A DNA stretch of 64,000 bases from contig NC_088814.1 in assembly GCF_011386835.1 (NCBI RefSeq), positions 3,534,001 through 3,598,000 of the forward strand, given 5' to 3'. Shown here piece by piece: positions 929 through 47,532 of this stretch; the first letter of the stretch is position 1, and each line of letters opens with the position of its first letter. Position numbers and translations under genes: made by a program. The stretch is from Chrysemys picta bellii (lineage: Eukaryota). The notes beneath the pieces are model-generated. The model was given only the letters and a program-made list of their open reading frames with translations, was not told the DNA's origin and ran no database searches.

Positions 929-3900
929 CTGGGGGGAGGATGCCACAGTTAGCACTTGGAACCCAGCCTGTCCCCGCCGTCCCCTGTGGCAGCCAGACCA
1001 AAGGCCTTTCCCGGGGGGAACGCAGCCTCCACCGGGCACAGGCCCGCCGTGGATGTCAGCACGGCATTTGGTGTCAGAGTGACAGCCAGGGACACATGGT
1101 ACCATGTGGCACTGGGGGGCTGTGCACCAGCCAGCAGAGAGCACCCATCGGCACCCATCTAACATGGCAGTGCCACTCAAAGCCCAGGTGAGTTGGGCAT
1201 AGGAGGAGTCCCTGGGTGGGGCAGAGAGCCGGACAGAGCCCTGGCAGAGGCCCCCACCCCTTACCACACTGCTTCACCGGCTTGTTGTCAGTCTGGAACA
1301 GCGTCTGGCGCCGGTTCCTGAAGATGGCTTTCCAGGGCACCTTCTGGAGGAAGCAGAGGTTGGGGTTCTGGTGGACCAGCACCATCCCGCTGCTGATCTC
1401 CTGCAGGGAGCGCAGGCCCAGCGAGACGATGGACAGGTTCTGCAGCGTCAGGGAGTAGGCACCGCTGCAGAGAGACGTCGACAGGCACGGGGTGAGCCAG
1501 GAGGGGTAGGACAACGAAGCAGGAGTCAGAGGGTCCCTGCCAGCCCCACACTCTAGGGGGCTCTGGAACTGGGTCACATCCTCCCATGTGCTCCCTCTGA
1601 ACCACAAACCCTGAGGGTGGCTTTTGTGAGCTGGCCTCTGGGCTGAGATACACCAAGCTCATTCCACATCTGCCAAATCCCAGCCACTGGGTTCGTCTCT
1701 AGGCTTCCATCCTGAAAGGCCCCATCACCACTGCCCTTGGGGAAGATCAGAGGACAGCTGGCTAGTACCACTCCCCCTCCTGTGACCAAGAGAACTGGGC
1801 ACATCCCCAACTGGCTTGCGAGGCCCATCCGTTCTCCGGACCCCGTCCGAGGGCCTGTTCCTCCCCACCCCGCGTCCCTGCCTGTGCACGCTCACTTGTG
1901 AAGCACTCGGCCTCGGATGATCCGGAGGTTCTGGAAGATGCTCAGGTCTGGGAAGGTCTCTGGCCAGGACTCGATGTATAAGAAGCCTGTGAAATGGAGC
2001 AGGAAGGCGCGTCCTTATTCATGCGAGCAGCGGCCTCCCACCAGCTGGTGGTGGGTCGGTCTCCCAAACTCCTCGGTGACTGATAGGTGCAGGGCCCAGG
2101 CCCGCCTCCTATGGCGTGTCCCCCCCAGGCTAAACAAGGTGGCTTAAATTTCCAGGGCAGCAGTGTGTGACCTTTAGCCAAAGCCCCACCCTGGGGGGCT
2201 GCCGAGCCCCATCCAGCGACTTTGCCAGCGAGCGACATGGAAACAGGAGTCGTTGGCACATCACAGATGGAGGCTGCATCCCGCTCTCGGTGGGCACTGG
2301 CAGGAGACGGGGATGAGTGAGCCCGGGCGCTGAGCAGTCCCTCACCCACCTGTCAGCTCCTCCAGGCTCCTAAAGCTCTTGAGCTGCTCCGGCTCCAAGG
2401 GGGCAGTGTTGGTGGCGGGATCCCTGTTGGAGAAGGAACACGGTCGGGGAGGGGGATCCTTAGAGGCGTAAGCCCTTGGGACCACGGACACGGGAGGCGG
2501 TGGCTGCCCTGCGGCCATGCAGTCACAGGGGCTGCCCGGCCTGATGGGCTACAATATCTGCAAGGCCCAGCTGGAGATTTTGGAAGAGTAAACGGACGCT
2601 CCGGGGGGAAGCCCCCGCTCACACCCGCTTCACGCTCCGTGACCCGCTCACGTGCACACTCGCCTCGGGCCTGCACGACTAAGGCCCAAGGGAGGTATCA
2701 GTTTCCAAAAAGGCCCGATCTAGACAGGACTGTAATGGACTGGCTGGTGTGTGCACTGCTGCCCCCTCCTGGAGAGAATCAGAACCATTCAACTGTGTGG
2801 CATAGGCCCTACACTGCTAATGGTGATTCCCCTTTGGCTCATGCATTAAGGGCTTGGGCTTTGGAGCAGAGACTCCCCTAGTGGCCAGATAGCTGAGCAG
2901 GAGTTAGCCAGCTCCTGGTGCCCCCACACAGTGCTCCGACATGCCACACACGCACCTCCTTCACCCAGGACATCTGAGTCCAGAGCTGGGCCCTCCCACC
3001 CACAGAGCCAGTAGCTCCCCCAGGGCGAGCCAGCAGGAGCTGTGCTGAGCTTGCCTGGGCTGGACAACGGCAGCGGAGATGGGGGCACCGGGCACCGCTA
3101 CTCACCCCATGAAGGTCTCGGGCAGGAAGGCCAGGCTGCCAAAGATCTTGGTGCAGTGGGCAAAGTGCTGGATGTTGGAGGCGTTGACGGCTCGGACGCC
3201 CTTCAAGAAATCCACACCCAGCCCGTAGCAGCCTAGGAGAGAGCAGGGCAGGGGCTGAGAGGGAACCCTGGTGTGGAATAACCCTGCGCCGACCACCCAT
3301 GTGCTTCCATTCCACCCATCGAGCCTCAGTACAGAGACACCCTTCCAGCCCCCCAGACCTTCATGCGGCTCCCTCTCCTCAAATCCAGAGAATCCCACAC
3401 TGCCGGATGTGCCTCCCCTGGTCCCTCCGGGAGAGGAGAGGGGCTCCCCAGGGCAGGGCACAGGGGATGGGGGAACGTTACCTTCCGGGCAGGGCTTGCT
3501 GCACTTCTCGCACTTCTGCACGCTGTCCGTGCTCACCTCCTGGTTGTCCTGGGGACACACCAGCGTGCAGGAGCCCACCTCCGTGGCCAGGTAATTGTCT
3601 GTGGGAAGGGGAGACATGGAGCGGAAAGATGGCCCCGTGGTTAGGGCATTAGCCTGTGACTCAGGAGACGTGCCGTCGATTCCCTGCTCTGCCACCGACT
3701 GCCTGTGGGACCTTGGGCAAATCCCTTCACCCCTCTGGGGTTCGGTCTCTCTTCGCCGGGGGGATAAATGGCACCGAGGAGCGGGAGGCACCCAGAGGCT
3801 ACAGTGACGAGATACACGAGTCTGCCCAGCTCACGCAGAGCCCGGGTCCGATCTGGGGGCTTCACTTTGGTCACAACGCTCGGACCCCAGACTCTGACCC

Positions 3901-6900
3901 TGGGTGGGGGGGGGAAATGGCCCCACCCCCACTGCCTGCAGCTAAGGACAAAGCCCCGTTGCTTCAGCTCCCTCCCCATTAACCCCTCGGCTGCTGCATT
4001 CCAACACGAAGGACTTAGTTTGCAATGTGGCTGCCCGGTTAACGGGAATTGCATGGTGTGTGGTGGGGTTTTTGGAGTGTGTGGGGGGAGTGCTATGGGC
4101 CTTGGAGCTCTGGGAGTTTGTGGCCCCCTAGGAGCCAGACCCGACTTTGGGAAGCGCCAGGCAAACGTCAATAGAAGCCCCTCCGACCGTCCTGCCCTGC
4201 CAGCAGGGGGCACTTTGCAAACGGAGCCCTGGGGGGGTTGCCCTGGGGGTCTCTCCACAGGGCTGGGGTGCAAGACCAAAGCCCAGCATACGCAGCTGGC
4301 AGGAAGTGGGACACCCCACAGAGCCCACCCCCCGGGATCTCCCCGGAGGAAGGGGTGCTTACAGGGGCACTTCCTGACACAGCTGGCTCCGAAGGTGTAG
4401 CGCCCGTCCCGGTTGGGCACCGACTGGAAGATGTCCGAGTTGTAGATGAAGAGGGGCGGGCAGTGCAGCTCGCAGATCCCGCTGCGGTTGACGTGCAGGC
4501 AGGCCTGGGGGGGAGCGAGCCAGCCCAGAGAGTGAGCAGCTAGGACACCCCTCCGCACCAATCCCTAACCCTCTCTATGCCAACTCCACCAGCTCCAACC
4601 AACCTCCCCATTCCATCCCCCACGTGAGCCTCTCTGCACCGATCCAGCCATCCCCACCGTGCCTACCCCCTCCATGCCCCCACCTGCCACCCTCCCACTC
4701 CCACCACGCTAACCCCCACCCCAACCCTTGACCCACCCCATCCACTGTGCTGACCCCCTGGCCACGCTCACACCCACTGGCGCTCACCAGGCAGTCCGAG
4801 TGCTTGGGCCCGGTGCAGCCCGCCGCGCACTGCTCATGGCAGCAGTCCGTGGGCTTCGTGCCCTTGCACCTGGGGCACCCGTCGCAGATGCTTTGGGTCA
4901 CTGGGGCAGAGAGAGAAGTGGGGAGGAACCATGAGGACCTGGAGGTTTGGCTATGGCCGCGTGACAGGCTCTTGGCATCTGGGGAGCTCTGCTGGGAACT
5001 CTCGGAGCCAGGAACCCAGATGGCCACAGCAAACAACTGCCCCCACCCCAGCACGCAGGGGTTTTCCCAGGGCAGGGGCTCTGCGCTTCCTGAAATCTCT
5101 CCTGTTCAATGGATCCATTTCCCCCTCATCCCGCCCCACTCCAATGTCTGTGCCTCCTTTCCCCATCCCCCCAGCCACAGCCTGCGTTTCCCCAACGTGC
5201 ATCTCCACCATCCGCCCAGCCACACCTTTGCCATCCTCCCCCGGCACCTGCCCCACCCCTCGCTCGGGGGGCGGTTAGAAAGCCACACAGTTCTCCTGGG
5301 CACCAACACGCTCGCTTCACCTCCCGGCGACACAGCCGGCACCATAGCACGGTGCCCCCCTCCCCCCCCCCCAGCCAGGCTTTGCAGGGTCCGGGCCCTA
5401 TCTGCATGGAGGGCGAGCTGGCCCCGTGTGCCACTGCAGGTCATGGGCAGAAACCTGAGTCCAGCACTCCCCCCCCGTGCCCGGTGCTCACGTGTCTGGC
5501 AGTACTGCGGCCCTTCCCCCCAGCAGTGCCCTTGGGAACAGAAGCGTCGGCAGTCAGCACCTGGGCAGGATGGAGAGAAGACCGAAGCCGTTAGAGGAGG
5601 CCCGAGACTCTGCCTCGCCCCCCTGCCCATGGAAACCCCCTCCCCAGGCTCCTCGAGCAGCCAGCCGGGGTGGAGGCCCCTGCAGCAGCTGCTATTCCCC
5701 ACCTCCCTCGCTCCACGACTGGCTTGAGGCACCACACCCCTGTCCCCCTTGGACAGGCCAGTCTGGAGCAAAGGACTGTGGGGCAGACGCGGGAGTGGCT
5801 GAGTGTCAAGCCTGGGAGAGTCATAAACCAGTCTATTGGGGTGTGCCAGGCTCGGGGGCGGAGGGGGGGAGGGAGGGCAGGCTTGGTTCCTGAAGGGTGT
5901 AGAGGCTCTGCCCCTTGTACCAGGCCCCACTCCTGGCATCCGGCACAGGACAGTCCCACATCTCCTCTCCAGAGCCGGAGCCCAATGAACTCGCCCGTGG
6001 GCCGGCACTAGATGGGACAGGCCAGATCTGACATCTTGTCAGCCCCGCCAAGGAGGCGGACGGTCCCTCCCTCCCTGGGAGCCGGGTCGCACGCGGAGAG
6101 ACCCCACCCGGGCACGTACACGTCCTCTCCCTGCTGCTGTTGATCTGCTGGTGCTGGGCCAGGTCGTTGTGTTTGTGGAAGATGTCGCCCCACAAGATGG
6201 TCTCCTGGAAACACAGCTGGGGGTTGCCCTCGATGTGCACCCCGCCCTTCAGGATCTCTGGAGTGGGGGGAGAACAGGACAGTAAGCAGAGCAGAAGGGA
6301 CAGCTACGGGCTTCCCACCCGCGCGGCCACTGAGGGAGACTGGGAGACACGGGCCAGCAGATGTCCCAGCCCGGCGATCCCTGGTGCTCCCCCATGACCC
6401 AGCCACGTGACATTCTCCTGGCGGCTGAGGAATCCAGCCCCCAGTCGAGGGGGCCGCAAGCTTATTTGAAATGACATTAGCCAGGCAAAGCGCTGAGGGA
6501 TGCTCAGAAAGGCCTTTGACCTTGACAACTGCATCTGCAGCAGCACGACCGGTGAGGGCAGTCGACCCTCATGCTCCAGGGCATCAGTCAGCTCTAACGG
6601 GGGCCAGGAAGAATCTCCCCCCACCAACCCCAATGCTGGGCTACTGCATCGCTAGGAGCCTTGTGTATCTGGTACTGGCCACGCTCAGAGAAAGGGGGAT
6701 GTGTGACTGGTTGGGCCTACTGGTCTGAACTGGTGTGGCAGGGAGGTCAGGATTACCAGGCACTAGTCTGATCCGGTGCAGTGAGGGGGATGCCGGACCA
6801 CATGGACCAGGGGTCTGATCCGGTGCAGTGAGGGGGATGCCGGACCACATGGACCAGGGGTCTGATCCGGTGCAGTGAGGGGGATGCCAGACCACATGGA

Positions 6901-9900
6901 CCAGGGGTCTGATCCGGTGCAGTGAGGGGGATGCCGGACCACATGGACCAGGGGTCTGATCGGGCACAGCATGGAGGCCTGGATACCAGGCTACGGGGAT
7001 CACTGGTCCAACAAAGTAGAGATATTACACTAGATGGGCCACTGCTTTGCTCTGGCACAGTGGTCCAGTGACAATCAGCTCTTCTAAACAGGTCCCTGGT
7101 GCATCCCCCCTAATTCTGAGTGTTCACTGGGATGAGCCCGGGCCCCCCAATTGGCTCCGGGGCCAGCCTCCCCACCTGTCAGATGCCTCATGCCCAGCTC
7201 CTGCAGCCCCACCGTCCCGGTGGGGTCGGCGTTGGCGAGAACGGCCAGCGCGTATTTCTCCTCGTAGAGCTGGGTGCCCCGGATGATGCGGAGGTTCTCC
7301 AGCTGCACGCGGCTCACTTGGTTCTGCGCAATCAGCACGTAGCCCTGGACCTCCTTGATATCCTAGAGGGGCAGAGAGCAGGGTCAGGGGGAGGCTGGGC
7401 ACCCATCCGGCTGAGGCTGGGCCGTCAGTGGGAGCAGAACCTATGAGCCCTGGAGCTAAACACAGGAGCTGCTACTGCCTGAGCTAACGGGCAACACCCA
7501 CGTCTCTGCCCACAACTACGGGCCAACCTTGGCAGAGCCCACTTCAGGGTCAGCCACTTATCTGGGGTCAGAGCGCCCAGGGGAACGCAGCAAGCACTGG
7601 GAAGATGGAGAAGACTTTCTGTGGGAAGAGCCGGAGATCTACCCATCCCACTGTATGATGTGGAAGGGAGGATGCTGAGCTCAGGGTCAGGGTTCCCCCC
7701 ATCCCCGCCGAGTTGCTCACCTTGAGGAAGGACATGTCGGCGTCTGGCCCCAGGTAGGTGATCTCCAGGTTGCCCTGCACCACCTGGCAGTTCTGGTAGA
7801 GGCGGCTGAGGGTGGCGTAGTGGTTTTCTGGGCTGGAGGGATGCAGCAACTTCATGTCAGTGCCCGTGCAGACTGCAGGGGGGTGGAAAGGAAGAGCCGG
7901 TGAGGCTGGGCAAGGGTGGTGGTCAGAGCTCTGGACGAGGCAGAGACGATGGATGCCATTCAGAGAGATGCTCGGCACCGTTTCTCCAAAGGCTGCTCCA
8001 CCCCAGCTGTGGGCGTTCAGCTAAACGGGGCCCAGCCCCCACCCACCCCTTACTCTGCAGGCATTTCCCCCAGGCACAGAGCTGTGACTGGAGAGCTAGC
8101 AGGCGCTTGGCCCTTCTGCAGGGCAAGAAGGAGGAAGGGGGGCCTGGCCCCTAGTTCTCACGCCTATGGGGCCAGATTTGCAGCGGAGCTCAGATGCCAT
8201 TTAGGCAGCTAAAGAACGGCAGGTTTTCCAAAGGGCTTGCTGAGCTCTGTAGCAAGTCCAGCCATTGTGTGCCTCTGGGCCTCAGTTCCCCACCTGTAAA
8301 ATGGGAGCAACGCGCCTTCCCGGCTGGTCTAGTTAGATCGTAAATTCCTGGGGCTGGGATTCCGTTGGCACATGTGGGAGCAGCACCTGCCACTTCAGCC
8401 CCAATCAGCTACGCCCCCTAGATGCTAGCGTAAATACACAGAAGAAACCCCCAGGGGATTATTACACATCAGTGGCTGCAAGGAAAACACAGGGCCCTGA
8501 ACTCAAGTCTCAACAGGTAAAAGCGCCTGGAGTGGGGTTTTTAAACACAGCCGCCTGCAAATCCCCAGACTTCTCTATTGCCTCCTGAAGCCCCCTTTGG
8601 GCAGACTCTGCCCATCGTAGGCAGGTTCCCTTTATCCATTTCAAAGGTTTCCCATACACCCAACCACTGCTGAGTGGTTGTAAATCAGGCAGCGGCTGTC
8701 TAAAGCCTTGCAGAAACCCCGAGGGAGAGATTACAAAAAAGAAATTTACAAGCAACTCCCACCCCCAAAAAAATCCTTTTGCTAGCATTTGCCAGGGTCA
8801 AGCTGCGTTTAAAGCAGAGATTCGAGAAACAGTTGATGGTGCGTAGGTCTTGTGCCAGGCAGAGAGGAAGGGTCCGATGGGAATCGGTGCAATGGAGCAT
8901 CCGGGCGAAGTGCCGGGTTTATTTTTATCTTGACGTGGTTGGGGCGGATGCAGAGCAGGTTCGAAGTTGCAGGAGGATTGTGAGGAGCGTCGCACAGCCG
9001 TGCGCGGTGCCCGTGTTTGTGACAAACCCTGCTGAACTCTAGAAATCTGACAGAGAGGCAGAGACGCCCACCAGGTTGGCCACTGAGGCTCCGTATCCAA
9101 GCCAAGTTTAAACCCCCTCAGCTGTGGGGACTGTTCAGGATTTCCCCCCCCGCCCCCAACTTCTGGAAGCGTAGTGAGGCTGGCGTTAATACCCTCCGGT
9201 CACGGACTCACTCCCCACACGGTCTGGACGCCGGACGTGTTTAGGAAGTGTCACTTTCCACAGGAAATGCCATGGACTAAAGTAACATCCATTTATCTCG
9301 GGAGGGCTTTCAACAGCTTCCTATGGGCTTCCTGTATGACTTCTCCCCACCACAAGGCAGAACAATGGGGTTTAGCCACAACCCTGTAAATGAGCAATTT
9401 GTTTGGTCCCAGCCCCCGTTCTCAGCCCCCTCACTGCCTCAGATAAAAGCTCCTCTGGGGGAGGCCCCGGTGGGAGGCCAAATGGATTGATGGCTTCTGC
9501 GTGTCAGGACCTCTCACCCCCACCATTGTGATCAGCTAACAAAAGGCTCCTGTCAATTAATTAGACAGAAGCTGTCAACATGGAACTCCAGCAGGGAGAG
9601 TTTTATCTGGATGCCCTCAAAGCGCCTTCCGCACAAAGCCTTCCAACCAGTAAGGAATGCTGGGTGACTCTTCTCCCTCCCTGGGCAGGGGAGTCCCGTC
9701 CGCCCCACTTCACAGAGGGAGAAATTCGGCACTCGCCCCAAGTCACCCAGTCAGCTGGAGAACAGAAACTCAGGAGCCCTGGTTCCCACTCCTGTGTTTT
9801 AGCAAGGAGATCACACGCCCTTCTCAGAGCCAGAAAGCCGGCCTCCGAGTCCTCAGCTCCAACCACTAACACCCCGCCCTTCCCAGGAGTCCTGTCTCAT

Positions 9901-21900: not shown

Positions 21901-24900
21901 AACCATTAAAATCCCCCCGCCTAGAGAGGAAGGGTGGTGAGTGGGCAGCAGGAGCAGGAGGTGAATCTCTAACAGAGATGCACAGAGAGGATGCTGAGTG
22001 AGCTGTCTGGCTCTCCCAGGCCAGGTGGAGGGGTGTCTGGGCTGAGTGCAACTTGCCCAAACCTTCAAGGAAAGAACGAAGTGGAGGTAAGGTTCATGCG
22101 TGTTGGCCTTTGTTGTTTTAACCCAATTCTCTCCCTACTGTGTTCCTGTTGAGTAATAAATACTGTAATACTTTGTTTTGAAAAGGCTGAACTGTGTGGC
22201 TGCAAACATTAGCTGGTTACACAGCTCCTGAGAGAGAAGCCTCCTGCTCCAGGAGCCCTGGGGAGAAACAGGGGTGCTATCACCCCGGGACCCAGTGGCA
22301 CAGGCGCAGGACTTCGCCTCGAGTGAAATGGGCCTATCACTAGAGGTCTGCAGAGGGGTACAAAGCAGAGCACATTCTGTGATCCCTGGCATCAGCCCTT
22401 CGGTCAGGGATTGTGTCTTACTCTAGGGCTATGCCTCGCCAAGCACAATGGGGTCCTGATCTAAGGTGGGGCCTGGCGGTGCTATTATTTATTATCTACA
22501 TTAAAATAACAGCCACCATTTAAAAAAAAAAAATCTAAGCAGCGTCTGGAGAGAGTGAATTGAAGAGATGACTCTACGGGTAAAGATTCCTAATGGAGGG
22601 ATCCATTAGGCTGTGGGACCGGATCTTAAGGAAGAGTCTGGATGCTCCATCTCTACAGATGCTTAAACCTGGAGGACTGCATAAGCAGGGAGAACAGACC
22701 CACAGAACAATCCTGAACCTGCGGGGAGGATGCGATTTAACAGGGCTATGCCCACTGCTAACCTGGACGATTCCATAGCCTGACCAGTACGGTGGAGATA
22801 GTTAATTTAGTTAGATTTTTAGATGCACCGATTCCAGGACCACGCGCAAAACATCCGCAAACAACACACACACAGACTCACCCCAGGGAAAAGCTGCACA
22901 TAAACCTTGCAAATCACCCGTTGTGTAAACAGACGGGCCTGACCTTGTGCCCTAAATGTTATCAGACTCAGGTTCTCTTAGTGTCCAAAGGTAATTCTAC
23001 CGTAACCAACAGTGACTCTGTAACCCAGTGGACCAAGTCCTGACAGGCGCGAGTCCTGCAAACACTCGAGCATGTGTGTAACTTGACCTACATGAATCAT
23101 CCCATTGACGTTAATGGGAAGGCACATGTGTGTCGAGTTATGCACGGGCTTCTGTGTTTGCGGGATTGGGGCATGCACACCTGTAAAGCCCTGCAGCCCA
23201 AAACTAGGATATAGAAGTGAACAATCCCCAGTGACTCTTTTTAATGTCGGGGTGTCATCACTATTTATTTTGGAACATTGTTACTCAGGCCCTGCCAGGA
23301 TGTCCCCATTCCCAGGAACAGGTTCTCTTTCCTGGGAAATTAGGGAGAACAATTAACTTCAACATTTTTTCAGATATTCTGATACCGACAAACACAAAGC
23401 ACCTTATTGGCATGTGAACTGGAAAAGGCGCTTCAGAATTCAGTGCCCACTTGCTGCTTGGATCTCACCAGCTTAGCAGGGTTGGGCCTAGATGGAATGT
23501 ATATGGGACAGACAGATACACACAAGCCCACAGGAAAACCCAAGCAGTGCTCCCAAGTCAGTAGGTGATGATCTTTCTGAACCAATGTCCCACCATGGCA
23601 GTAAGGGGGACACTGGTGCTGTTTTTTGGCTGAAATATCAACTAAAGTAATTAAAGATCCTGTGGGATTTTCTCCCCTTGGGAGTAGGGGGGGGTTAATC
23701 TGGCTGTCTTTGCCAATTCCAATCTGAGTAAATACATTCTGCCACTGTATATCCCCCTTCACTCCTGCAGATTCAATAGAAGGAGTTTCCCCCTTCACTT
23801 TCTCCCTCAAACTGTTGGATAGTATTGCTCTGTGCCGTTAGGCAGCTGATGTGTTCCACCCCAGAACTGGCTGCATCTCATCTTGTGAGTGAAGTTACTC
23901 CTGTATATGTAAAGTCTCTGAAGCACTTCAGGATGAGAGGTCCTTTATAAGATACAGTTCTCTGAGGGCCACATTACCCAGGAGCTCTTATCACTAAATA
24001 TAGTGTATTACAGGGACCCTAGGGCCTAGATATGGGTTTAACATAGACCTGCCCAATTTGCAGGTCCAATTCATACTCAGCTAAGACATCAGAAAACAAA
24101 CACTACTAGTTAGTAAATATTTGGGTTTGTGCATAAGGTGCTATGGATTATTTACCTAAATCTGACATACTGGATAACTCCCTTGGGAATCAGCACCTAG
24201 AATTTCCTGTCTGTCCTCTTGCCCAACAGTCAATGAACTACAAAATGTAACTGCATCAATAAAGCTGCAACCCCCCAGGATTCAAATACAATAAACAGCT
24301 CGACACTGTAAACAGCAGACAAGATGGATGAGGTGGTAACATTTTCAATAAACAACTTGCCTTCTGCATAAATCAAAAAGGCTAAAATCTTTTTGGCCTC
24401 ACTTATTTCCTCATTGTACATTTTGAAACACGCCAAACAAGCATTCACTTCAACCAGCCCCATCACAAAAATTGGTTCGAATCCTAGCCTCTGAAATTCC
24501 TAACATAAATTCCTTTCCAGACTATTTAATTTGTGAGTGAGCTATAAAATAATTGCCCAGGTAAACTATTACTGGACTCAAATTCATCCTTAAAGGTGAT
24601 TTCGCACACAGAGCAAAACGCAAATAAAGAGAAAAATTCAGCCCGTAGAGTTCATCCAACATCTCAGAGTGAGTAAAGTCTGATCCAGCCATCTACTACT
24701 GTACACAACAATCAGATGGGTAACTCTGTTCCCTTACAACGCAGTGCTTAGATATACAACTCACTCCAGATCTCTGCAGGCAACTTCAGGGTCTGCCTGG
24801 GATTGCTTTTGTACTATTAAGCAAACTCCATGGATCCTATGTTTGAAACCCACTCTTTCCTTGTAGCAGCAACAACGAGAACAGGGAATGAAAGAAACCA

Positions 24901-25565
24901 TTTTAAAAAACAGCCAAGTCTCCCCCTCCCTACGCTCCTGATGCAACCGCAGTTCTCTGCCTCTCTAGTCACGTCTGGATGGTGTAATGGTCCCTGGGAA
25001 AGGTCCCTTTCCCTGCGTGTGTAAAACAACACAAAACGACAACATCTAGAAACACGCTCCCCACTGAAGTGGCAGCCCTGCTCTGAAAGCTCCAGCTAAA
25101 TCCTTGCTAAACCAGGACTCATGGGACCCAGTCAATGTCATGCTCGCGAAAGTAATTAACAAACTCCCCTCCCCACTCCCCCTCACACCTCATTCTGCTG
25201 GGTGGAATGATTAATTTCTGCGTTCTCGGTAGATCTTTGAGTAACGACACTAAGATTGTTAAACTAGGTCAGCTCTCTTTCTTTATGCAAGTTACACAAA
25301 ACTTCAGACAAAGTTTTTTGTTTTGGGTTTGCACCCCCTCCCCCCTTTCTTTTCCGGGGCTGTGTGTGCTTGTTTGGAGTTTTCTTCGCCCACATCCTAA
25401 GATCTCTCTCCCTGATCTGAAGTTTCTCTTTCCTAACGTCCCACACAAGCTTGCTTTTCTCTCTCTCTTTTTCAAATCTGACCCACCTTCTGTGCTCCAA
25501 CAGCCTGGCAAGGAAGAGGCTAAAAACAGCCCCATGCAGAAGCACCAGCTGCTGGGAAGGATCAT
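796..25565 (-). CDS. ERBB2: Receptor tyrosine kinase erbB-2 (HER2/neu), 5' part: coding exons 1-13 (signal peptide, ectodomain I-III, start of IV); continues left of the window
   Basis: 13 GT-AG exons totalling 1622 nt (540 codons + 2) in one continuous frame. Peptides [39 protein letters not shown] and [10 protein letters not shown] match ERBB2, and exon sizes match human or differ by multiples of 3. Synteny with PGAP3/PNMT/TCAP. Confidence 0.97.
1265..1464 (-). CDS. ERBB2: ERBB2 coding exon 12 (200 nt), [26 protein letters not shown]...KPVKQC
   Basis: ctgcag acceptor; G|GTAAG donor; same size as human exon. Confidence 0.95.
1896..1986 (-). CDS. ERBB2: ERBB2 coding exon 11 (91 nt), [29 protein letters not shown]
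   Basis: tttcacag acceptor; AA|GTGAG donor. Confidence 0.95.
2350..2423 (-). CDS. ERBB2: ERBB2 coding exon 10 (74 nt), [24 protein letters not shown]
   Basis: ccaacag acceptor; G|GTGGG donor; absent from the ORF track, read by hand. Confidence 0.93.
3106..3232 (-). CDS. ERBB2: ERBB2 coding exon 9 (127 nt), [42 protein letters not shown]
   Basis: ctcctag acceptor; GG|GTGAG donor. Confidence 0.95.
3482..3598 (-). CDS. ERBB2: ERBB2 coding exon 8 (117 nt), [38 protein letters not shown]
   Basis: cccacag acceptor; G|GTAAC donor. Confidence 0.95.
3628..3745 (+). mobile_element. tRNA-derived MIR/CORE-like SINE fragment
   Basis: gtggttagggc head ... gaccttgggcaaatc core. Confidence 0.6.
4363..4504 (-). 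CDS. ERBB2: ERBB2 coding exon 7 (142 nt), dimerisation arm, [47 protein letters not shown]
   Basis: ccccag acceptor; T|GTAAG donor. Confidence 0.95.
4788..4900 (-). CDS. ERBB2: ERBB2 coding exon 6 (113 nt), [37 protein letters not shown]
   Basis: gccccag acceptor; CTG|GTGAG donor. Confidence 0.95.
5492..5560 (-). CDS. ERBB2: ERBB2 coding exon 5 (69 nt), [22 protein letters not shown]
   Basis: gcccag acceptor; C|GTGAG donor; Cys spacing conserved. Confidence 0.93.
6120..6257 (-). CDS. ERBB2: ERBB2 coding exon 4 (138 nt), [45 protein letters not shown]
   Basis: ctccag acceptor; T|GTACGT donor. Confidence 0.94.
6766..6961. repeat. 47-bp minisatellite, 4 near-identical copies plus a partial, ERBB2 intron 3
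   Basis: gtctgatccggtgcagtgagggggatgccggaccacatggaccaggg starts at 6766, 6813, 6860, 6907 and 6954. Confidence 0.95.
7176..7362 (-). CDS. ERBB2: ERBB2 coding exon 3 (187 nt), [16 protein letters not shown]...[17 protein letters not shown]
   Basis: cctctag acceptor; G|GTGGG donor. Confidence 0.94.
7721..7872 (-). CDS. ERBB2: ERBB2 coding exon 2 (152 nt), [50 protein letters not shown]
   Basis: ccctgcag acceptor; AAG|GTGAGC donor; same size as human exon 2. Confidence 0.96.
13805..13990 (+). mobile_element. MIR/CORE-like SINE
   Basis: gggcaagtcactt...tttccccatctataaaatgggaataata. Confidence 0.7.
17440..17640 (-). mobile_element. MIR/CORE-like SINE plus an extra SINE head
   Basis: gggaaactgaggcacaga...agaacccaggag (twice). 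Confidence 0.65.
20150..20320 (-). mobile_element. MIR/CORE-like SINE
   Basis: cagatggggaaactaaggca...tgacttgcc. Confidence 0.7.
21597..22385. mobile_element. Possible solo LTR in ERBB2 intron 1
   Basis: TG start, internal AATAAA near 22155, repeat-like texture; ends and TSD not resolved. Confidence 0.3.
25487..25565 (-). CDS. ERBB2: ERBB2 coding exon 1, signal peptide [26 protein letters not shown] (alternative in-frame ATG at 25574 adds MKK)
   Basis: Hydrophobic signal-like peptide ending in phase 1 (GAA G|GTGGGT), which joins exon 2 to give TEVCTG. An HER2-type uORF sits just upstream. Intron 1 is about 17.6 kb. Confidence 0.88.
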
Positions 25566-25570
25566 CTTTT

Positions 25571-25591
25571 TCATTGCAGACAGCAACCCAT
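25571..25591 (-). promoter_or_regulatory. ERBB2 upstream ORF MGCCLQ*
   Basis: Minus strand reads gaagcc ATG GGT TGC TGT CTG CAA TGA aaaag ATG ATC: strong Kozak context, 6 codons, 5-nt spacer. Confidence 0.85.
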
Positions 25592-26573
25592 GGCTTCTTG
25601 CAGAGAGAGGTCTTCCCAGAAAGTTTGGGTGGGTTTCCCTTCCTTTGCACTCCCAGATCCACAACTTTATTCGTGCACAGCACTTCCTCCTCTGGGAGGC
25701 GGGGACGTGCCGCGCGCCCCCGAGCTGGATTCCAACTCCCTTGGGAGTGGCTAGGCAGTCTCACTCCTTGTAGCATGCCAAGACCATTGTGTGCCTCCTG
25801 AGTCCTGGGAAAGCACTTCTCGCTGTCCTGTTGCTGCAGGGTCATTCGGATTTCACTTTTCCTCTTGGCCTCTTTTTGTTTGGTCTCCGCCTGGGCTGCT
25901 CTGGGACAGATCCGAGTAAATAGAGATGTCAAGAAAAAGGACGAGAGCAAAAAAATAAAAGGGTTGATTGAGGTGTACACATTGGAAAATCTCTCCTAGG
26001 AGAAGGCAGGCTTGCAAACTGCTCTAAGAACCACTCCATAGCAGGGAAACTCCCTCCAGATCAAGGGAATTGGGAGGTGGGCATTAGCCGCTACCCAGGG
26101 GTTCTGGGATTTAGGGACAAATCTCCAAAAGGGTGCAACTCTCCAGGCGCCTAAACAAGCAGGTGGGTTTTCAAGAGGGCTTTCAGCAGGAGTGGTTGGG
26201 TTCTGTGCAGTTTGAATAGCCGACCGCATCTTTCTGTGCCAAAGTAGAGGCTCACCTGCCTTGAAAAGCTGCCCTGATTGTGGGGGTAGAACCCTCCTGG
26301 AAATTCTGGCCTCCTGCTCGTCTTTATAAGGGTGCTGAGCTCAGAGCGCGCAGCCACAGTGATCTGTGCCTGAGTCTGTAGACAGCCTGAAACGATAGCG
26401 TGAACTGCCCTCAACCGTGTCCTTTAACTCTGAAAACTAATGATCATTAATGATAACTTCATGTGAACATTGTTAACCATTTTGCTGCTGATCTAGGTAT
26501 GTGAGAAAGGAGAGAGACAGTGAGACTATGCAGAGCTGGAAGTAAAGTGACTGGAGTTTGGGTTATGAGAGAA

Positions 26574-26822
26574 AGAACATAACAATGGCCATGCTGGGTC
26601 AGACCAATGGTCCATCTAACACAGTATCCTGTCTCTGACAGTGGCCAGTTTCAGATGCTTCAGAGGGAATGAACAGAACAGGGCAATTTTGAGTGAGCTA
26701 TCCCTGTTGTCCAGTCCCAGCTTCTATCAGTCAGAGGTTTAGGGGCACCTGGAGCATGGGGTTATGTCCCTGACCATCTTGGCTAATAGCCATTAATGGA
26801 CTTGTCCTCCATGAACTTAGCT
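26574..26822 (-). mobile_element. CR1 LINE 3'-end fragment
   Basis: Reverse complement ends ...gatggaccattggtctgacccagcatggccattgttatgttct, a recalled reptile CR1 3' terminus. Confidence 0.75.
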
Positions 26823-28748
26823 ATGAGCAGAATTTGGTTTGAGGGTGGAACTTGGGAGAGCATCACTGCAGGAGATGTTGTCAATTCAAATCTTCTCTGG
26901 GAGGGAATCCTTGCCTCATACAGAAGGCGGAAGATTCCCTCAAAATGCCACACCATCCATCAGGGAACCACAGCACAGTTTGGTTCGGACCCACTGCACA
27001 GAGGGTGCCCAACCCCATCTCTCAGTGGATCAGGAGAGGAGACCGTGATGCATCATGGGAAATGTAGGCCACATGGGAGATGTAGTCCAGCCATGAAGTC
27101 TAGCCCGCAGAGCAAAAGGGGAGCATGAGGCACGCAAATCACAACTCCCATGAGGCACCATGGTGGCATTTCCAAATAAAAAAGTGTTTTTGTTTTTTTA
27201 CCAAATAGATTAAATTTACCATGAAAAAGTTAAATGGAAAAAAAATGGTTTTCATTACAATTTTCCACAAACACCCTCTTTCTCAGATAATCCCTAGCTG
27301 AGGCCCCCAAATTCATTCACACAAGCCACGAAACAGCCATCGGATGGCGATAATTTCCATTCACTGTTCACCTGGAGCTAGATCTGAACCTATCCCAAGA
27401 GGAAGGGACTAACTAGTCACTATCATAAGTAAAGAGAAGTTGGTCTAGTGATCTGCGTCTGGGAAAGAGGATACCTAGGTTTAGTTCCTAGATCTGCCAC
27501 TAACCCAGCTGTGTAACCTCAGGCAGGTTACTTCTCTCACTTTCCCCTGCTCTAAAATAGCTTAATAACACTTAAATAAGGGAGGTTGCAAGACTTATTG
27601 CTCTGGAAGCTTGAGGCCCCTGGATTAAAGGCCCTGGAGAAGGAGAAAGTATCTTGTTAAGAAGAAACTAGTTTTCTTTGTCGTTTTCTGGATTCTAAAC
27701 AGAGGTCAATATCTTGAGTACAAGAGAGTATTTCTAGTCAATATCTTAAACCAACAGTGCAGGGTGGGGAGTCTGCTTGTTAATATCCTAAGTGGAGATG
27801 CCAGAGTGGGGCAGTTGGATTGTGTCCAGGAGTATATGTATCTCTGGATAGCATGTGCGATCTGAATCTGAGCAGGTATTGGCACTTCTGGCAGGATCCC
27901 ACTGCTAGGAAGTTAGTGCTTGATTCATGTTCCCAGCCTCAGAAGACTAATAGGCAGAACTTCCTATATTTGGCAGTCCTCCATTCATTTCCTTGCGTGG
28001 CTGGAAGTCCTCATCAGGGCTATAATGGGCTGCCACAGTTCTGTCTCAGAGGAGAGGGTGGTTTGGGGGAGGAGTTAGCCTGAGAGATTAGACCCTGGGG
28101 AAGAAAATCTTGGAAGCAGGAAGGGCTCTTAGAGAATGAACTCCATTCACGCTTCTGCTGAGCCTTCCACACAGCCAAAAAAAAAAAAAAATCCATCTGT
28201 TGTTGTTATTGTTTTTCTCCCTTTCCTGCAGCCGTTTGAAAATGGGAGGGAAAAAGAAGGCAGGAAAACGAGTTTATTGCTCGTGTTCCCTGTAATCTGC
28301 ACCTGATAATAGCCAGGCACCACTTTACAATCCGTGCAATTGTGTTGTAGTTGGGATGTGTGTGAAAGTGGGCAGGGACAGACAGAGACAGGTCCAAGGG
28401 TTGAGAGAGTGCAGGCAAGAGAGAAAAAAGAAGAGGGTCCCAGGGGGCCTTGTCACATTACAAGGATGGTTACAACATATTTGCATCTTGAAGTGTAGAT
28501 AGGGCCAAGCCGGCTGAAAGCTGTACCCTGATTCAGGGACAGAATTTGCAAACAGTGTGATCTCATCTACTCTGCAAGATAGAACTAAGTTAGGCGAGCA
28601 CTGCCCTGGAACTATTGGGCAGTGAGAGAGTGGCCTTGTTTTGAAGGGGTCTTGGGGGATAGGGTGGAGGAACTGGAGTTCCTTTTGGCCTGGATATTTC
28701 CAAATCAAACCCTCTGCCAATTTGGCATTAAAGCATTACCTTGTGTGA

Positions 28749-29777: not shown

Positions 29778-29920
29778 TATTTCCCATGATCCTCTCTGCC
29801 CTGGAGAGGGTAAGACATTATTTCCCATGATCCCCTCTGCCCTGTGGGGCTGTCAGGCACTATTTCCCATGATCCCCTCTGTCCGGGTGGGGAGTTGGAC
29901 AAATATTTCCCATGAGCCCC
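29778..29920. repeat. 41-43-bp tandem repeat with core TATTTCCCATGA, 4 copies (degenerate copies back to about 29615)
   Basis: Core at 29778, 29819, 29861 and 29904. Confidence 0.85.
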
Positions 29921-30022
29921 TTCGCCCTCAGCGAGGAACGCTTGTGCGCGGCCCGTGTTTCCGGGGGGAAGCGGCCCCTTCCGGTGCGGCCGGAAGCGGC
30001 AGTCCCATGGTCCGGCGGCGGG

Positions 30023-47532
<17,510 letters not shown>

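What the first reader, a model, noticed from the sequence alone, without database searches (positions are those of the whole stretch)
25560..25597. HER2-type repressive uORF architecture present in a reptile
The minus strand reads gaagcc ATG GGT TGC TGT CTG CAA TGA aaaag ATG. The human leader, as I recall it, is gagcc ATG GGG CCG GAG CCG CAG TGA gcacc ATG. Both have GCC-ATG-G context, 6 codons starting MG and ending Q, a TGA stop and exactly 5 nt to the main AUG, while internal codons and spacer have diverged. The human uORF is known to repress HER2 translation, largely through the short spacer hindering reinitiation, and I know it as described in mammals. Kept geometry implies selection since the amniote ancestor, and it supports 25565 as the orthologous start.
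Basis: partly seen in the sequence, partly recalled or inferred. Interest (0 to 1): 0.75.

Follow-up and report, generated by a model that had tools for sequence, protein, structure and literature searches.

The report
Turtle ERBB2 keeps the HER2 uORF
Just ahead of the start codon of this turtle's ERBB2 (HER2) gene is the same six-codon upstream reading frame that throttles HER2 translation in mammals; it has the same length and spacing in turtles, an alligator and a wolverine, so this known brake dates back at least to the first amniotes.

Summary
On the minus strand, gaagcc ATG GGT TGC TGT CTG CAA TGA aaaag ATG lies at 25597-25563, directly before the signal-peptide exon of ERBB2. Exons 2 and 3 at 7872-7721 and 7362-7177 identify the gene.

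Leaders fetched from other species show the same cassette: a strong-context uAUG, six codons, CAR-TGA, then 5 nt.
- It is present in a box turtle, a softshell turtle, an alligator and a wolverine.
- Two squamates keep a six-codon uORF but with a 7-nt spacer. One is a spliced mRNA contig, so there the uORF is transcribed.
- The emu has GTG in place of the uATG.
- A non-amniote mRNA has an 8-codon uORF that also ends 5 nt before its AUG.

An in-frame ATG at 25574 overlaps the uORF stop (CAATGA). NCBI models of turtles and crocodilians start there (MKKMI.../MKTMI...), so "5 nt to the main AUG" holds only for the orthologous AUG at 25565.

I obtained no RNA reads for this turtle, so transcription of the uORF and repression are inferred here.

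Verdict: an orthologue of a known mammalian element, an ordinary but clean extension.

The parts
25571..25591 (-). uORF: ATG GGT TGC TGT CTG CAA TGA (MGCCLQ plus stop), with the uAUG in the strong context GCC AUG G
   Evidence: Read directly. The same 6-codon frame occurs in Terrapene, Pelodiscus, Alligator, Gulo, Lacerta and a squamate mRNA.
25566..25570 (-). 5-nt spacer (aaaag) between the uORF stop and the orthologous main AUG
   Evidence: The length is 5 nt in turtles, alligator, emu and wolverine, and 7 nt in squamates. The letters are not conserved.
25572..25574 (-). In-frame ATG overlapping the uORF stop (CAATGA). It gives an MKK- extension of the signal peptide and is the annotated start in related turtles and crocodilians.
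   Evidence: NCBI proteins of 10 named turtle species start MKKMIL, Crocodylus starts MKKMIS and Alligator starts MKTMIS.
25487..25565 (-). Coding part of ERBB2 exon 1 from the orthologous AUG ([26 protein letters not shown] plus the first base of Val). The GT donor is at 25486-25485.
   Evidence: The N-termini align with Pelodiscus MTPPSS..., birds MIAAGG... and alligator MISPSS....
7721..7872 (-). ERBB2 exon 2 (V)[13 protein letters not shown]...SFLK, which fixes the gene identity and the splice phase
   Evidence: Used as the query, it retrieved ERBB2 proteins.
7177..7362 (-). ERBB2 exon 3 ([15 protein letters not shown]...MRHLT)
   Evidence: The best PDB match is rat HER2 (1n8y_C), E 1.3e-20.
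25682..25689 (-). GAGGAAGT, an Ets/PEA3-type motif 91 nt upstream of the uAUG, followed by the TATA-like AATAAA at 25671-25666
   Evidence: The motif is also present in Terrapene, Pelodiscus, Alligator and Gulo. [quoted passage not shown] Its role here is inferred.
25727..25751 (-). Conserved promoter block GCCACTCCCAAGGGAGTTGGAATCC
   Evidence: It is identical in Terrapene and Alligator apart from the leading G (A in Alligator), differs by one further letter in Pelodiscus, and is recognisable in Lacerta and Gulo.

Best explanation
The 21-nt frame at 25591-25571 (minus strand) is the turtle orthologue of the mammalian HER2/ERBB2 upstream open reading frame, inherited from at least the amniote ancestor.

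Likely mechanism, by analogy with the mammalian experiments:
1. Transcription starts downstream of the conserved Ets-motif and TATA-like block, around 25640-25655. This is inferred.
2. Most scanning 43S complexes initiate at the uAUG because of its strong GCC-AUG-G context, translate six codons and terminate at UGA.
3. The next usable AUGs are too close for efficient reinitiation. One overlaps the stop at 25574 and one lies 5 nt downstream at 25565.
4. ERBB2 synthesis therefore depends on the minority of ribosomes that leak past the uAUG or reinitiate inefficiently.
5. The peptide itself is probably irrelevant. Only M1, mostly G2, and the last codon CAR are kept.

Shown here: the sequence, the gene identity, positional and geometric conservation across amniotes, and presence in a spliced squamate mRNA. 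Inferred: inclusion in this turtle's mRNA, translation of the uORF, and repression.
For: Sequence and geometry.

Gene identity and a unique exon 1.

Cross-species table:
- Terrapene is identical to the window.
- Pelodiscus: ggagcc ATG GGC TGC AGC CCG CAG TGA agaca ATG.
- Alligator: gaagcc ATG GGC TGG AGT CTG CAA TGA aaacg ATG.
- Wolverine: cgagcc ATG GGG CCG GAG CCG CAG TGA gcacc ATG.
- Lacerta and the squamate mRNA contig L008: ATG AGY TGG GAT YTG CAA TGA plus 7 nt. In L008 exon 1 is joined to exon 2, so it is RNA.

Pattern of conservation: between turtle and wolverine the matching letters in the block are the context, ATG, GG, CA and TGA. The rest of the leader needs many gaps.

Background rate of the exact geometry: about 6e-4 per ATG.

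The MKKM/MKTM N-termini of 10 named turtle species and 3 crocodilian species show that ATGA plus the 5-nt spacer is kept in them.

Mechanism in mammals: a strong Kozak context and a 5-nt spacer repress HER2 (PMC11106035). Mutating the uAUG derepresses a reporter, and removing the uStop lowers it further, so reinitiation contributes (PMC4820681).
Against: - No RNA evidence for this turtle. The single read-laying run was lost to a filter. The 14 runs that hold 25487-25720 are only guessed to be RNA and are contigs.
- The emu has GTG, not ATG, at the uORF start and no other uATG within 300 nt, so an AUG-initiated uORF is not indispensable in every sauropsid.
- Squamates have a 7-nt spacer.
- The in-frame AUG at 25574 means the first main-frame AUG is not 5 nt downstream but overlaps the stop. 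The spacer argument taken from human work may therefore not transfer unchanged.
- Turtle-alligator identity is high throughout the leader. The weight of the conservation argument rests on the deep comparisons (mammal, squamates, softshell turtle).
Confidence: 0.8

Rival explanations
1. The cassette is conserved, but in turtles and crocodilians the working main start is the AUG at 25574 that overlaps the uORF stop (AUGA). Control would then be by stop-start overlap and leaky scanning rather than by a 5-nt intercistronic gap. The protein would carry an MKK-extended signal peptide.
For: - The in-frame ATG at 25574 has G at -3.
- NCBI models in 10 named turtle species and 3 crocodilian species start MKKMI.../MKTMI....
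- MKK gives a positively charged n-region, which is typical of signal peptides (general knowledge).
- A rodent-like Logan ORF starts MIIMELAAW, which suggests the same overlap type.
Against: - Pelodiscus (CAGTGA), wolverine (CAGTGA) and emu (CGCTGA) lack this AUG.
- In squamates it is out of frame.
- It therefore looks like a by-product of CAA-TGA rather than the conserved start.
- Annotation pipelines pick the first in-frame ATG by rule, so the models are not independent evidence.
Confidence: 0.12
2. The block is conserved for a reason other than uORF translation. It could be a DNA-level promoter or initiator element, or an RNA element around the main AUG. In this turtle the uATG would then be either untranscribed or bypassed.
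For: - The TSS in this turtle was not measured.
- The emu keeps the frame and the 5-nt spacer with GTG instead of ATG, which could mean that something other than AUG initiation is under selection.
Against: - What is conserved is what a uORF needs: start codon and its context, an in-frame stop, and a length free of indels. Internal codons and spacer letters vary.
- A spliced squamate mRNA contig contains the uORF with 80 nt of leader upstream of it.
- The conserved Ets and TATA-like promoter block lies 75-98 nt upstream of the uAUG.
- In human reporters the uAUG is functional.
Confidence: 0.06
3. Chance resemblance: a short ORF that happens to lie before the start codon, unrelated to the mammalian one.
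Against: - The exact geometry occurs at about 6e-4 per ATG in this window.
- The same cassette, at the same place relative to the same exon, is found in every amniote leader fetched. One of these, the emu, differs by an ATG-to-GTG change.
Confidence: 0.02

Closest known systems
Mammalian HER2/ERBB2 (neu) uORF (Child, Miller and Geballe 1999; Mehta et al. 2006; Spevak et al. 2006, cited from the reference lists; reporter data in Wethmar et al. 2016, PMC4820681)
   Same: Same gene and same position directly before the signal-peptide AUG. It has six codons, a GCC-AUG-G context, M-G at the start, CAR-UGA at the end and a 5-nt spacer. The wolverine sequence (L006) aligns without gaps to the turtle block.
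   Different: The internal codons differ (MGCCLQ versus MGPEPQ) and the spacer letters differ. The turtle has an extra in-frame AUG overlapping the stop. The predicted leader is shorter, about 60 nt before the uAUG against about 150 nt in mammals. No functional data exist for any reptile. The 3'UTR derepression element described in human was not examined because the 3' end of the gene is outside the window.
[quoted passage not shown]
   Same: These are short conserved uORFs that end 7 and 4 nt before the first main AUG. They control downstream initiation by leaky scanning and reinitiation (PMC3045505; PMC4820681).
   Different: They are in different genes. There the uORF steers the choice between in-frame isoform starts. 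Such a role is only a speculation here, for AUG 25574, AUG 25565 and Met11.
Stop-start overlap (AUGA / UAAUG) termination-reinitiation
   Same: The uORF stop UGA shares two bases with an in-frame AUG (25574-25572).
   Different: Known efficient cases in viruses need an upstream 18S-binding element. None was looked for or is implied here, and the overlap is not conserved outside turtles, crocodilians and probably rodents.

Membership tests
HER2/ERBB2 uORF | Lies in the ERBB2 gene, immediately 5' of the signal-peptide start codon | tested here: met
   Exons 2 and 3 are ERBB2. Terrapene ERBB2 exon 1 maps only to 25574-25470, which includes exon 1 (25574-25487). PGAP3 is on the other strand upstream.
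HER2/ERBB2 uORF | Six sense codons | tested here: met
   MGCCLQ plus TGA.
HER2/ERBB2 uORF | uAUG in a strong Kozak context (purine at -3, G at +4) | tested here: met
   gaaGCCATGG. The literature criterion is in PMC11106035 and PMC4820681.
HER2/ERBB2 uORF | Stop codon 5 nt upstream of the main AUG | tested here: met
   TGA at 25573-25571, aaaag, then ATG at 25565. Caveat: an in-frame ATG at 25574 overlaps the stop.
HER2/ERBB2 uORF | Positional and sequence homology to the mammalian element | tested here: met
   Gap-free correspondence with wolverine L006. Intermediates are present in Pelodiscus, Alligator and squamates.
HER2/ERBB2 uORF | Present in the mature mRNA (TSS upstream of the uAUG) | tested here: inconclusive
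   Shown for a squamate spliced mRNA contig (L008).
HER2/ERBB2 uORF | Represses translation of the main ORF, with derepression when the uAUG is mutated | not testable with these tools
   Shown for human leaders only (PMC4820681; reviews).
HER2/ERBB2 uORF | 3'UTR translational derepression element that counteracts the uORF | not tested
   The 3' end of the gene lies outside the window. The element is described for human in PMC11106035.

The most novel reading that the evidence does not exclude
The uORF-plus-AUG cassette may be older than amniotes. A non-amniote mRNA also ends a uORF 5 nt before its AUG.

In archelosaurs the cassette may work as a three-way start selector. Ribosomes that terminate at UGA could (a) reinitiate on the overlapping in-frame AUG to give an MKK-extended signal peptide, (b) use the AUG 5 nt downstream, or (c) reinitiate at the conserved Met11 (CMG, 30 nt further on, the start used in one alligator model). 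The uORF would then set not only the amount of ERBB2 but also which signal peptide it carries.
Probability: 0.12. Interest if true: 0.55.

Novelty: new member of a known kind. Interest (0 to 1): 0.38.

Why it matters
The HER2 uORF is a textbook translational brake on an oncogene, and it has been described and tested in mammals. Finding it with unchanged length, start context and spacing in turtles and a crocodilian, and with small changes in squamates, shows that the geometry rather than the peptide has been held for more than 300 million years (the date is from general knowledge of amniote divergence). This supports the spacing-based mechanism.

The natural variants amount to ready-made mutants for reporter tests: GTG in emu, a 7-nt spacer in squamates, and the overlapping in-frame AUG in turtles, crocodilians and probably rodents.

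The finding also bears on annotation. The orthologous ERBB2 start in turtles is most likely 25565 (MILPSS...), not the MKK start used in current gene models.

Tried and rejected
The error message said to lay beside those places, so I retried on 24500-28100. There is therefore no read-level evidence on TSS or splicing.
- After, no letters of 28164-28206 went as a query to any search tool. Local scripts did read the whole window file: regex counts, and the local tblastn database.
- The look-up of sequencing runs listed 14 small runs, guessed to be RNA, that hold 25487-25720. Without laying them I give them no weight.
- Three encoding-contig look-ups failed because isoform X2/X3 products are not on record (Rhea, Ahaetulla, Pseudophryne). 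The Hyperolius gene was too long to return DNA. As a result there is only one bird and no identified amphibian.
- A search with the first 150 residues of the turtle protein found no turtle or crocodilian N-terminal transcript fragment.
- Searching papers for the peptide MGPEPQ found nothing. Mehta 2006 and Spevak 2006 are not held. Wethmar 2016 scored uAUG conservation in nine vertebrates including chicken and zebrafish, but the result is in a figure that is not held, and no supplement is held.
- No human contig was fetched or compared. The mammalian comparison uses wolverine.
Full report
**What is in the window**

- The ATG at 25565 opens [26 protein letters not shown].
- This frame stops in phase 1 at 25487 in front of a GTGGGT donor.
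- The dangling G joins the TC at the start of the next exon (7872-7721) to give ...[17 protein letters not shown]....
- That exon and the following one (7362-7177, [15 protein letters not shown]...) are unmistakably ERBB2. The best solved-structure match of exon 3 is rat HER2. Used as a query, exon 2 retrieved ERBB2 proteins of turtles, birds, crocodilians, squamates, frogs and mammals.
- A local tblastn of the Terrapene ERBB2 protein places its exon-1 residues at 25574-25470, which runs past the 25487 donor, and nowhere else. It places residues 30-544 on exons further down the minus strand.
- PGAP3 starts on the other strand near 30020. Synteny is therefore as in mammals.
- The window has no N.

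**Is it more than chance?**

The exact geometry is ATG, five sense codons, a stop, five bases, ATG. It occurs at one other site among the 1,615 ATGs on both strands of the window, a rate of about 6e-4. The stricter pattern with GCCATGG and CAR-TGA occurs only here. Because the comparison target was fixed beforehand by the mammalian element, this alone makes chance unlikely. The cross-species data settle it.

**Related leaders**

The route to the other leaders was as follows.
- I obtained ERBB2 protein ids from the representative library using exon 2.
- I widened these with a word search.
- I fetched the genomic or transcript DNA that encodes them.

Anchored on the main AUG, the blocks are:

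| Species | Context | uORF and stop | Spacer |
|---|---|---|---|
| Window and Terrapene | gaagcc | ATG GGT TGC TGT CTG CAA TGA | aaaag |
| Pelodiscus | ggagcc | ATG GGC TGC AGC CCG CAG TGA | agaca |
| Alligator mississippiensis | gaagcc | ATG GGC TGG AGT CTG CAA TGA | aaacg |
| Gulo gulo (wolverine) | cgagcc | ATG GGG CCG GAG CCG CAG TGA | gcacc |
| Lacerta agilis | gaaatt | ATG AGC TGG GAT TTG CAA TGA | aaaaaca (7 nt) |
| Squamate mRNA contig L008 | gggatc | ATG AGT TGG GAT CTG CAA TGA | gaaaaca (7 nt) |
| Dromaius (emu) | ggggcc | GTG GGC CGC GGC CCG CGC TGA | gcacc |

I fetched no human DNA.
- L008 is a Logan contig in which exon 1 runs straight into exon 2, so it is spliced RNA. It carries 80 nt of leader upstream of the uAUG.
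- The emu has no ATG anywhere in the 300 nt upstream of its main AUG.
- The proteins MKKMIL... (10 named turtle species), MKKMIS... (Crocodylus) and MKTMIS... (both Alligator species) show indirectly that ATGA and the 5-nt spacer are kept there too.

**Pattern of conservation**

Between turtle and wolverine the matching letters in the block are the last four bases of the context, ATG, GG, part of codon 5, CA of codon 6, TGA and the main ATG. Codons 3-4 and the spacer differ.
- The rest of the leader aligns only with many gaps.
- Signal-peptide length itself varies between lineages.
- The peptides share only M1, mostly G2, and Q6: MGCCLQ, MGCSPQ, MGWSLQ, MSWDLQ, MGPEPQ.

This is the signature of selection on the presence, length and placement of a short ORF, not on a peptide. 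Turtle and alligator are similar throughout the leader, so that pair adds little. The weight comes from mammal versus archelosaurs versus squamates, and from the deep split between softshell and hard-shelled turtles.

**Outside amniotes**

One transcript contig (L007, run SRR22028078) encodes an ERBB2 that falls outside frogs plus amniotes in a maximum-likelihood tree (support 89/85).
- Its leader has an 8-codon uORF (MALHCPMH, TAA) that also ends exactly 5 nt before the main AUG.
- The looser geometry (any uORF of 2-31 codons ending 5 nt before an ATG) has a background rate of about 1.5%.
- This is suggestive, not proof, of an older origin.

Because the last uORF codon is CAA, the letters CA-ATG-A contain a second ATG at 25574-25572. 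It is in frame with the main ORF and gives MKKMILPSS....
- This is the start used in NCBI gene models of related turtles and of crocodilians.
- A rodent-like Logan ORF (MIIMELAAW...) suggests the same overlap there.
- Pelodiscus, wolverine and emu lack it.
- In squamates the 7-nt spacer puts it out of frame, where it opens a second uORF overlapping the main start.
- The AUG at 25565 is therefore the conserved, orthologous start. The statement "exactly 5 nt to the main AUG" is true for that AUG only, and the first main-frame AUG in this turtle overlaps the uORF stop.

**Is the uORF in the mRNA?**

I could not test this for the turtle.

Indirect support:
- An Ets/PEA3-type GAGGAAGT (25689-25682) followed by AATAAA (25671-25666), and a further block (25751-25727), lie 75-160 nt upstream of the uAUG. 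They are shared with Terrapene, Pelodiscus, Alligator and, recognisably, wolverine and Lacerta.
- The segment after the motif in wolverine (gaatgaagttgtggagctgagag) matches the turtle (gaataaagttgtggatctgggag).
- The 5' end of the squamate mRNA contig aligns to this same region.

I therefore place the turtle TSS near 25640-25655, about 50-65 nt before the uAUG. This is an inference.

**Mechanism**

For mammals the literature held here says three things.
- The uORF strongly inhibits HER2 translation because of the optimal context of its AUG and the 5-nt gap to the CDS. HER2 is made by leaky scanning or reinitiation (PMC11106035; PMC3738444).
- In reporters, mutating the ERBB2 uAUG raises output.
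- Removing the uStop lowers output, so reinitiating ribosomes contribute (PMC4820681).

The turtle cassette has all the sequence requirements, so the same brake is the most likely function. Its strength, and which of the three nearby in-frame AUGs (25574, 25565, Met11 at 25535) is used, are open.

**Novelty**

The papers I could read describe the element as mammalian. One paper scored uAUG conservation in nine vertebrates including chicken and zebrafish, but its result is in a figure I could not read. None of the 16 papers that name the HER2/ERBB2 uORF has a title or abstract about reptiles.
- The finding is an orthologue of a known element in a new clade: clean, useful for annotation and for mechanism, but not surprising.
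- Other notes of the scan report conserved uORFs in other genes of this genome (TSC1, FOXG1, CPEB4). None covers this locus.

- No human contig was fetched.
- No N was filled.
- Letters of 28164-28206 were not sent as a query to any search tool. Local scripts that read the whole window file are named in Tried and rejected.

Noticed in passing
L005 (Dromaius novaehollandiae) 2967-3003: The emu ERBB2 leader keeps the six-codon frame, TGA and the 5-nt spacer gcacc (the same letters as in wolverine), but it starts with GTG instead of ATG. No ATG occurs in the 300 nt upstream. This could be a near-cognate start or loss of the brake in birds. Only one bird could be fetched.
   Followed up: partly
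L004 (Lacerta) 2973-3000 and L008 (squamate mRNA) 81-108: In squamates the spacer is 7 nt. The ATG inside CAATGA is therefore out of frame and opens a second uORF (20 codons in L008, 111 in Lacerta) that overlaps the main start. This could be an additional brake.
   Followed up: partly
L007 (Logan SRR22028078) 1-320: This non-amniote ERBB2 mRNA leader has five upstream ATGs. The last uORF begins with the same 12 bases as the main ORF (ATGGCACTGCAC), which suggests a small duplication of the start region. A uORF at -80 has six codons, TGA and a gagcATGG context like the amniote one. The organism was not identified.
   Followed up: partly
window 25533-25535 (minus strand): An in-frame Met (CMG) 30 nt after the main AUG is conserved in turtles, crocodilians and squamates but absent in mammals. 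One alligator gene model starts there. It is a possible reinitiation site that would give a shorter signal peptide.
   Followed up: no
window 29873-30628, 32221-32589, 41298-41498, 45671-46051 (plus strand): PGAP3 exons lie on the plus strand, with its ATG near 30020 inside a GC-rich island. It is head-to-head with ERBB2, about 4.4 kb from ERBB2 exon 1.
   Followed up: partly
window 6640-7110 (minus strand, ERBB2 intron 3): Translations of all three minus-strand frames show a motif (…[25 protein letters not shown]…) repeated several times. This indicates a tandem repeat of roughly 100 nt in the intron.
   Followed up: no
proteins P0245, P0249, P0254, P0259 (turtles, crocodilians); P0256, P0258, P0261: Annotated isoforms start at the Met of exon 2 (MKLL...), as in the shorter human isoform as I recall it. 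This implies alternative 5' exons that skip exon 1 and the uORF. Crocodilian X1 models carry an extra 19-residue segment between exons 1 and 2.
   Followed up: no
   Followed up: no
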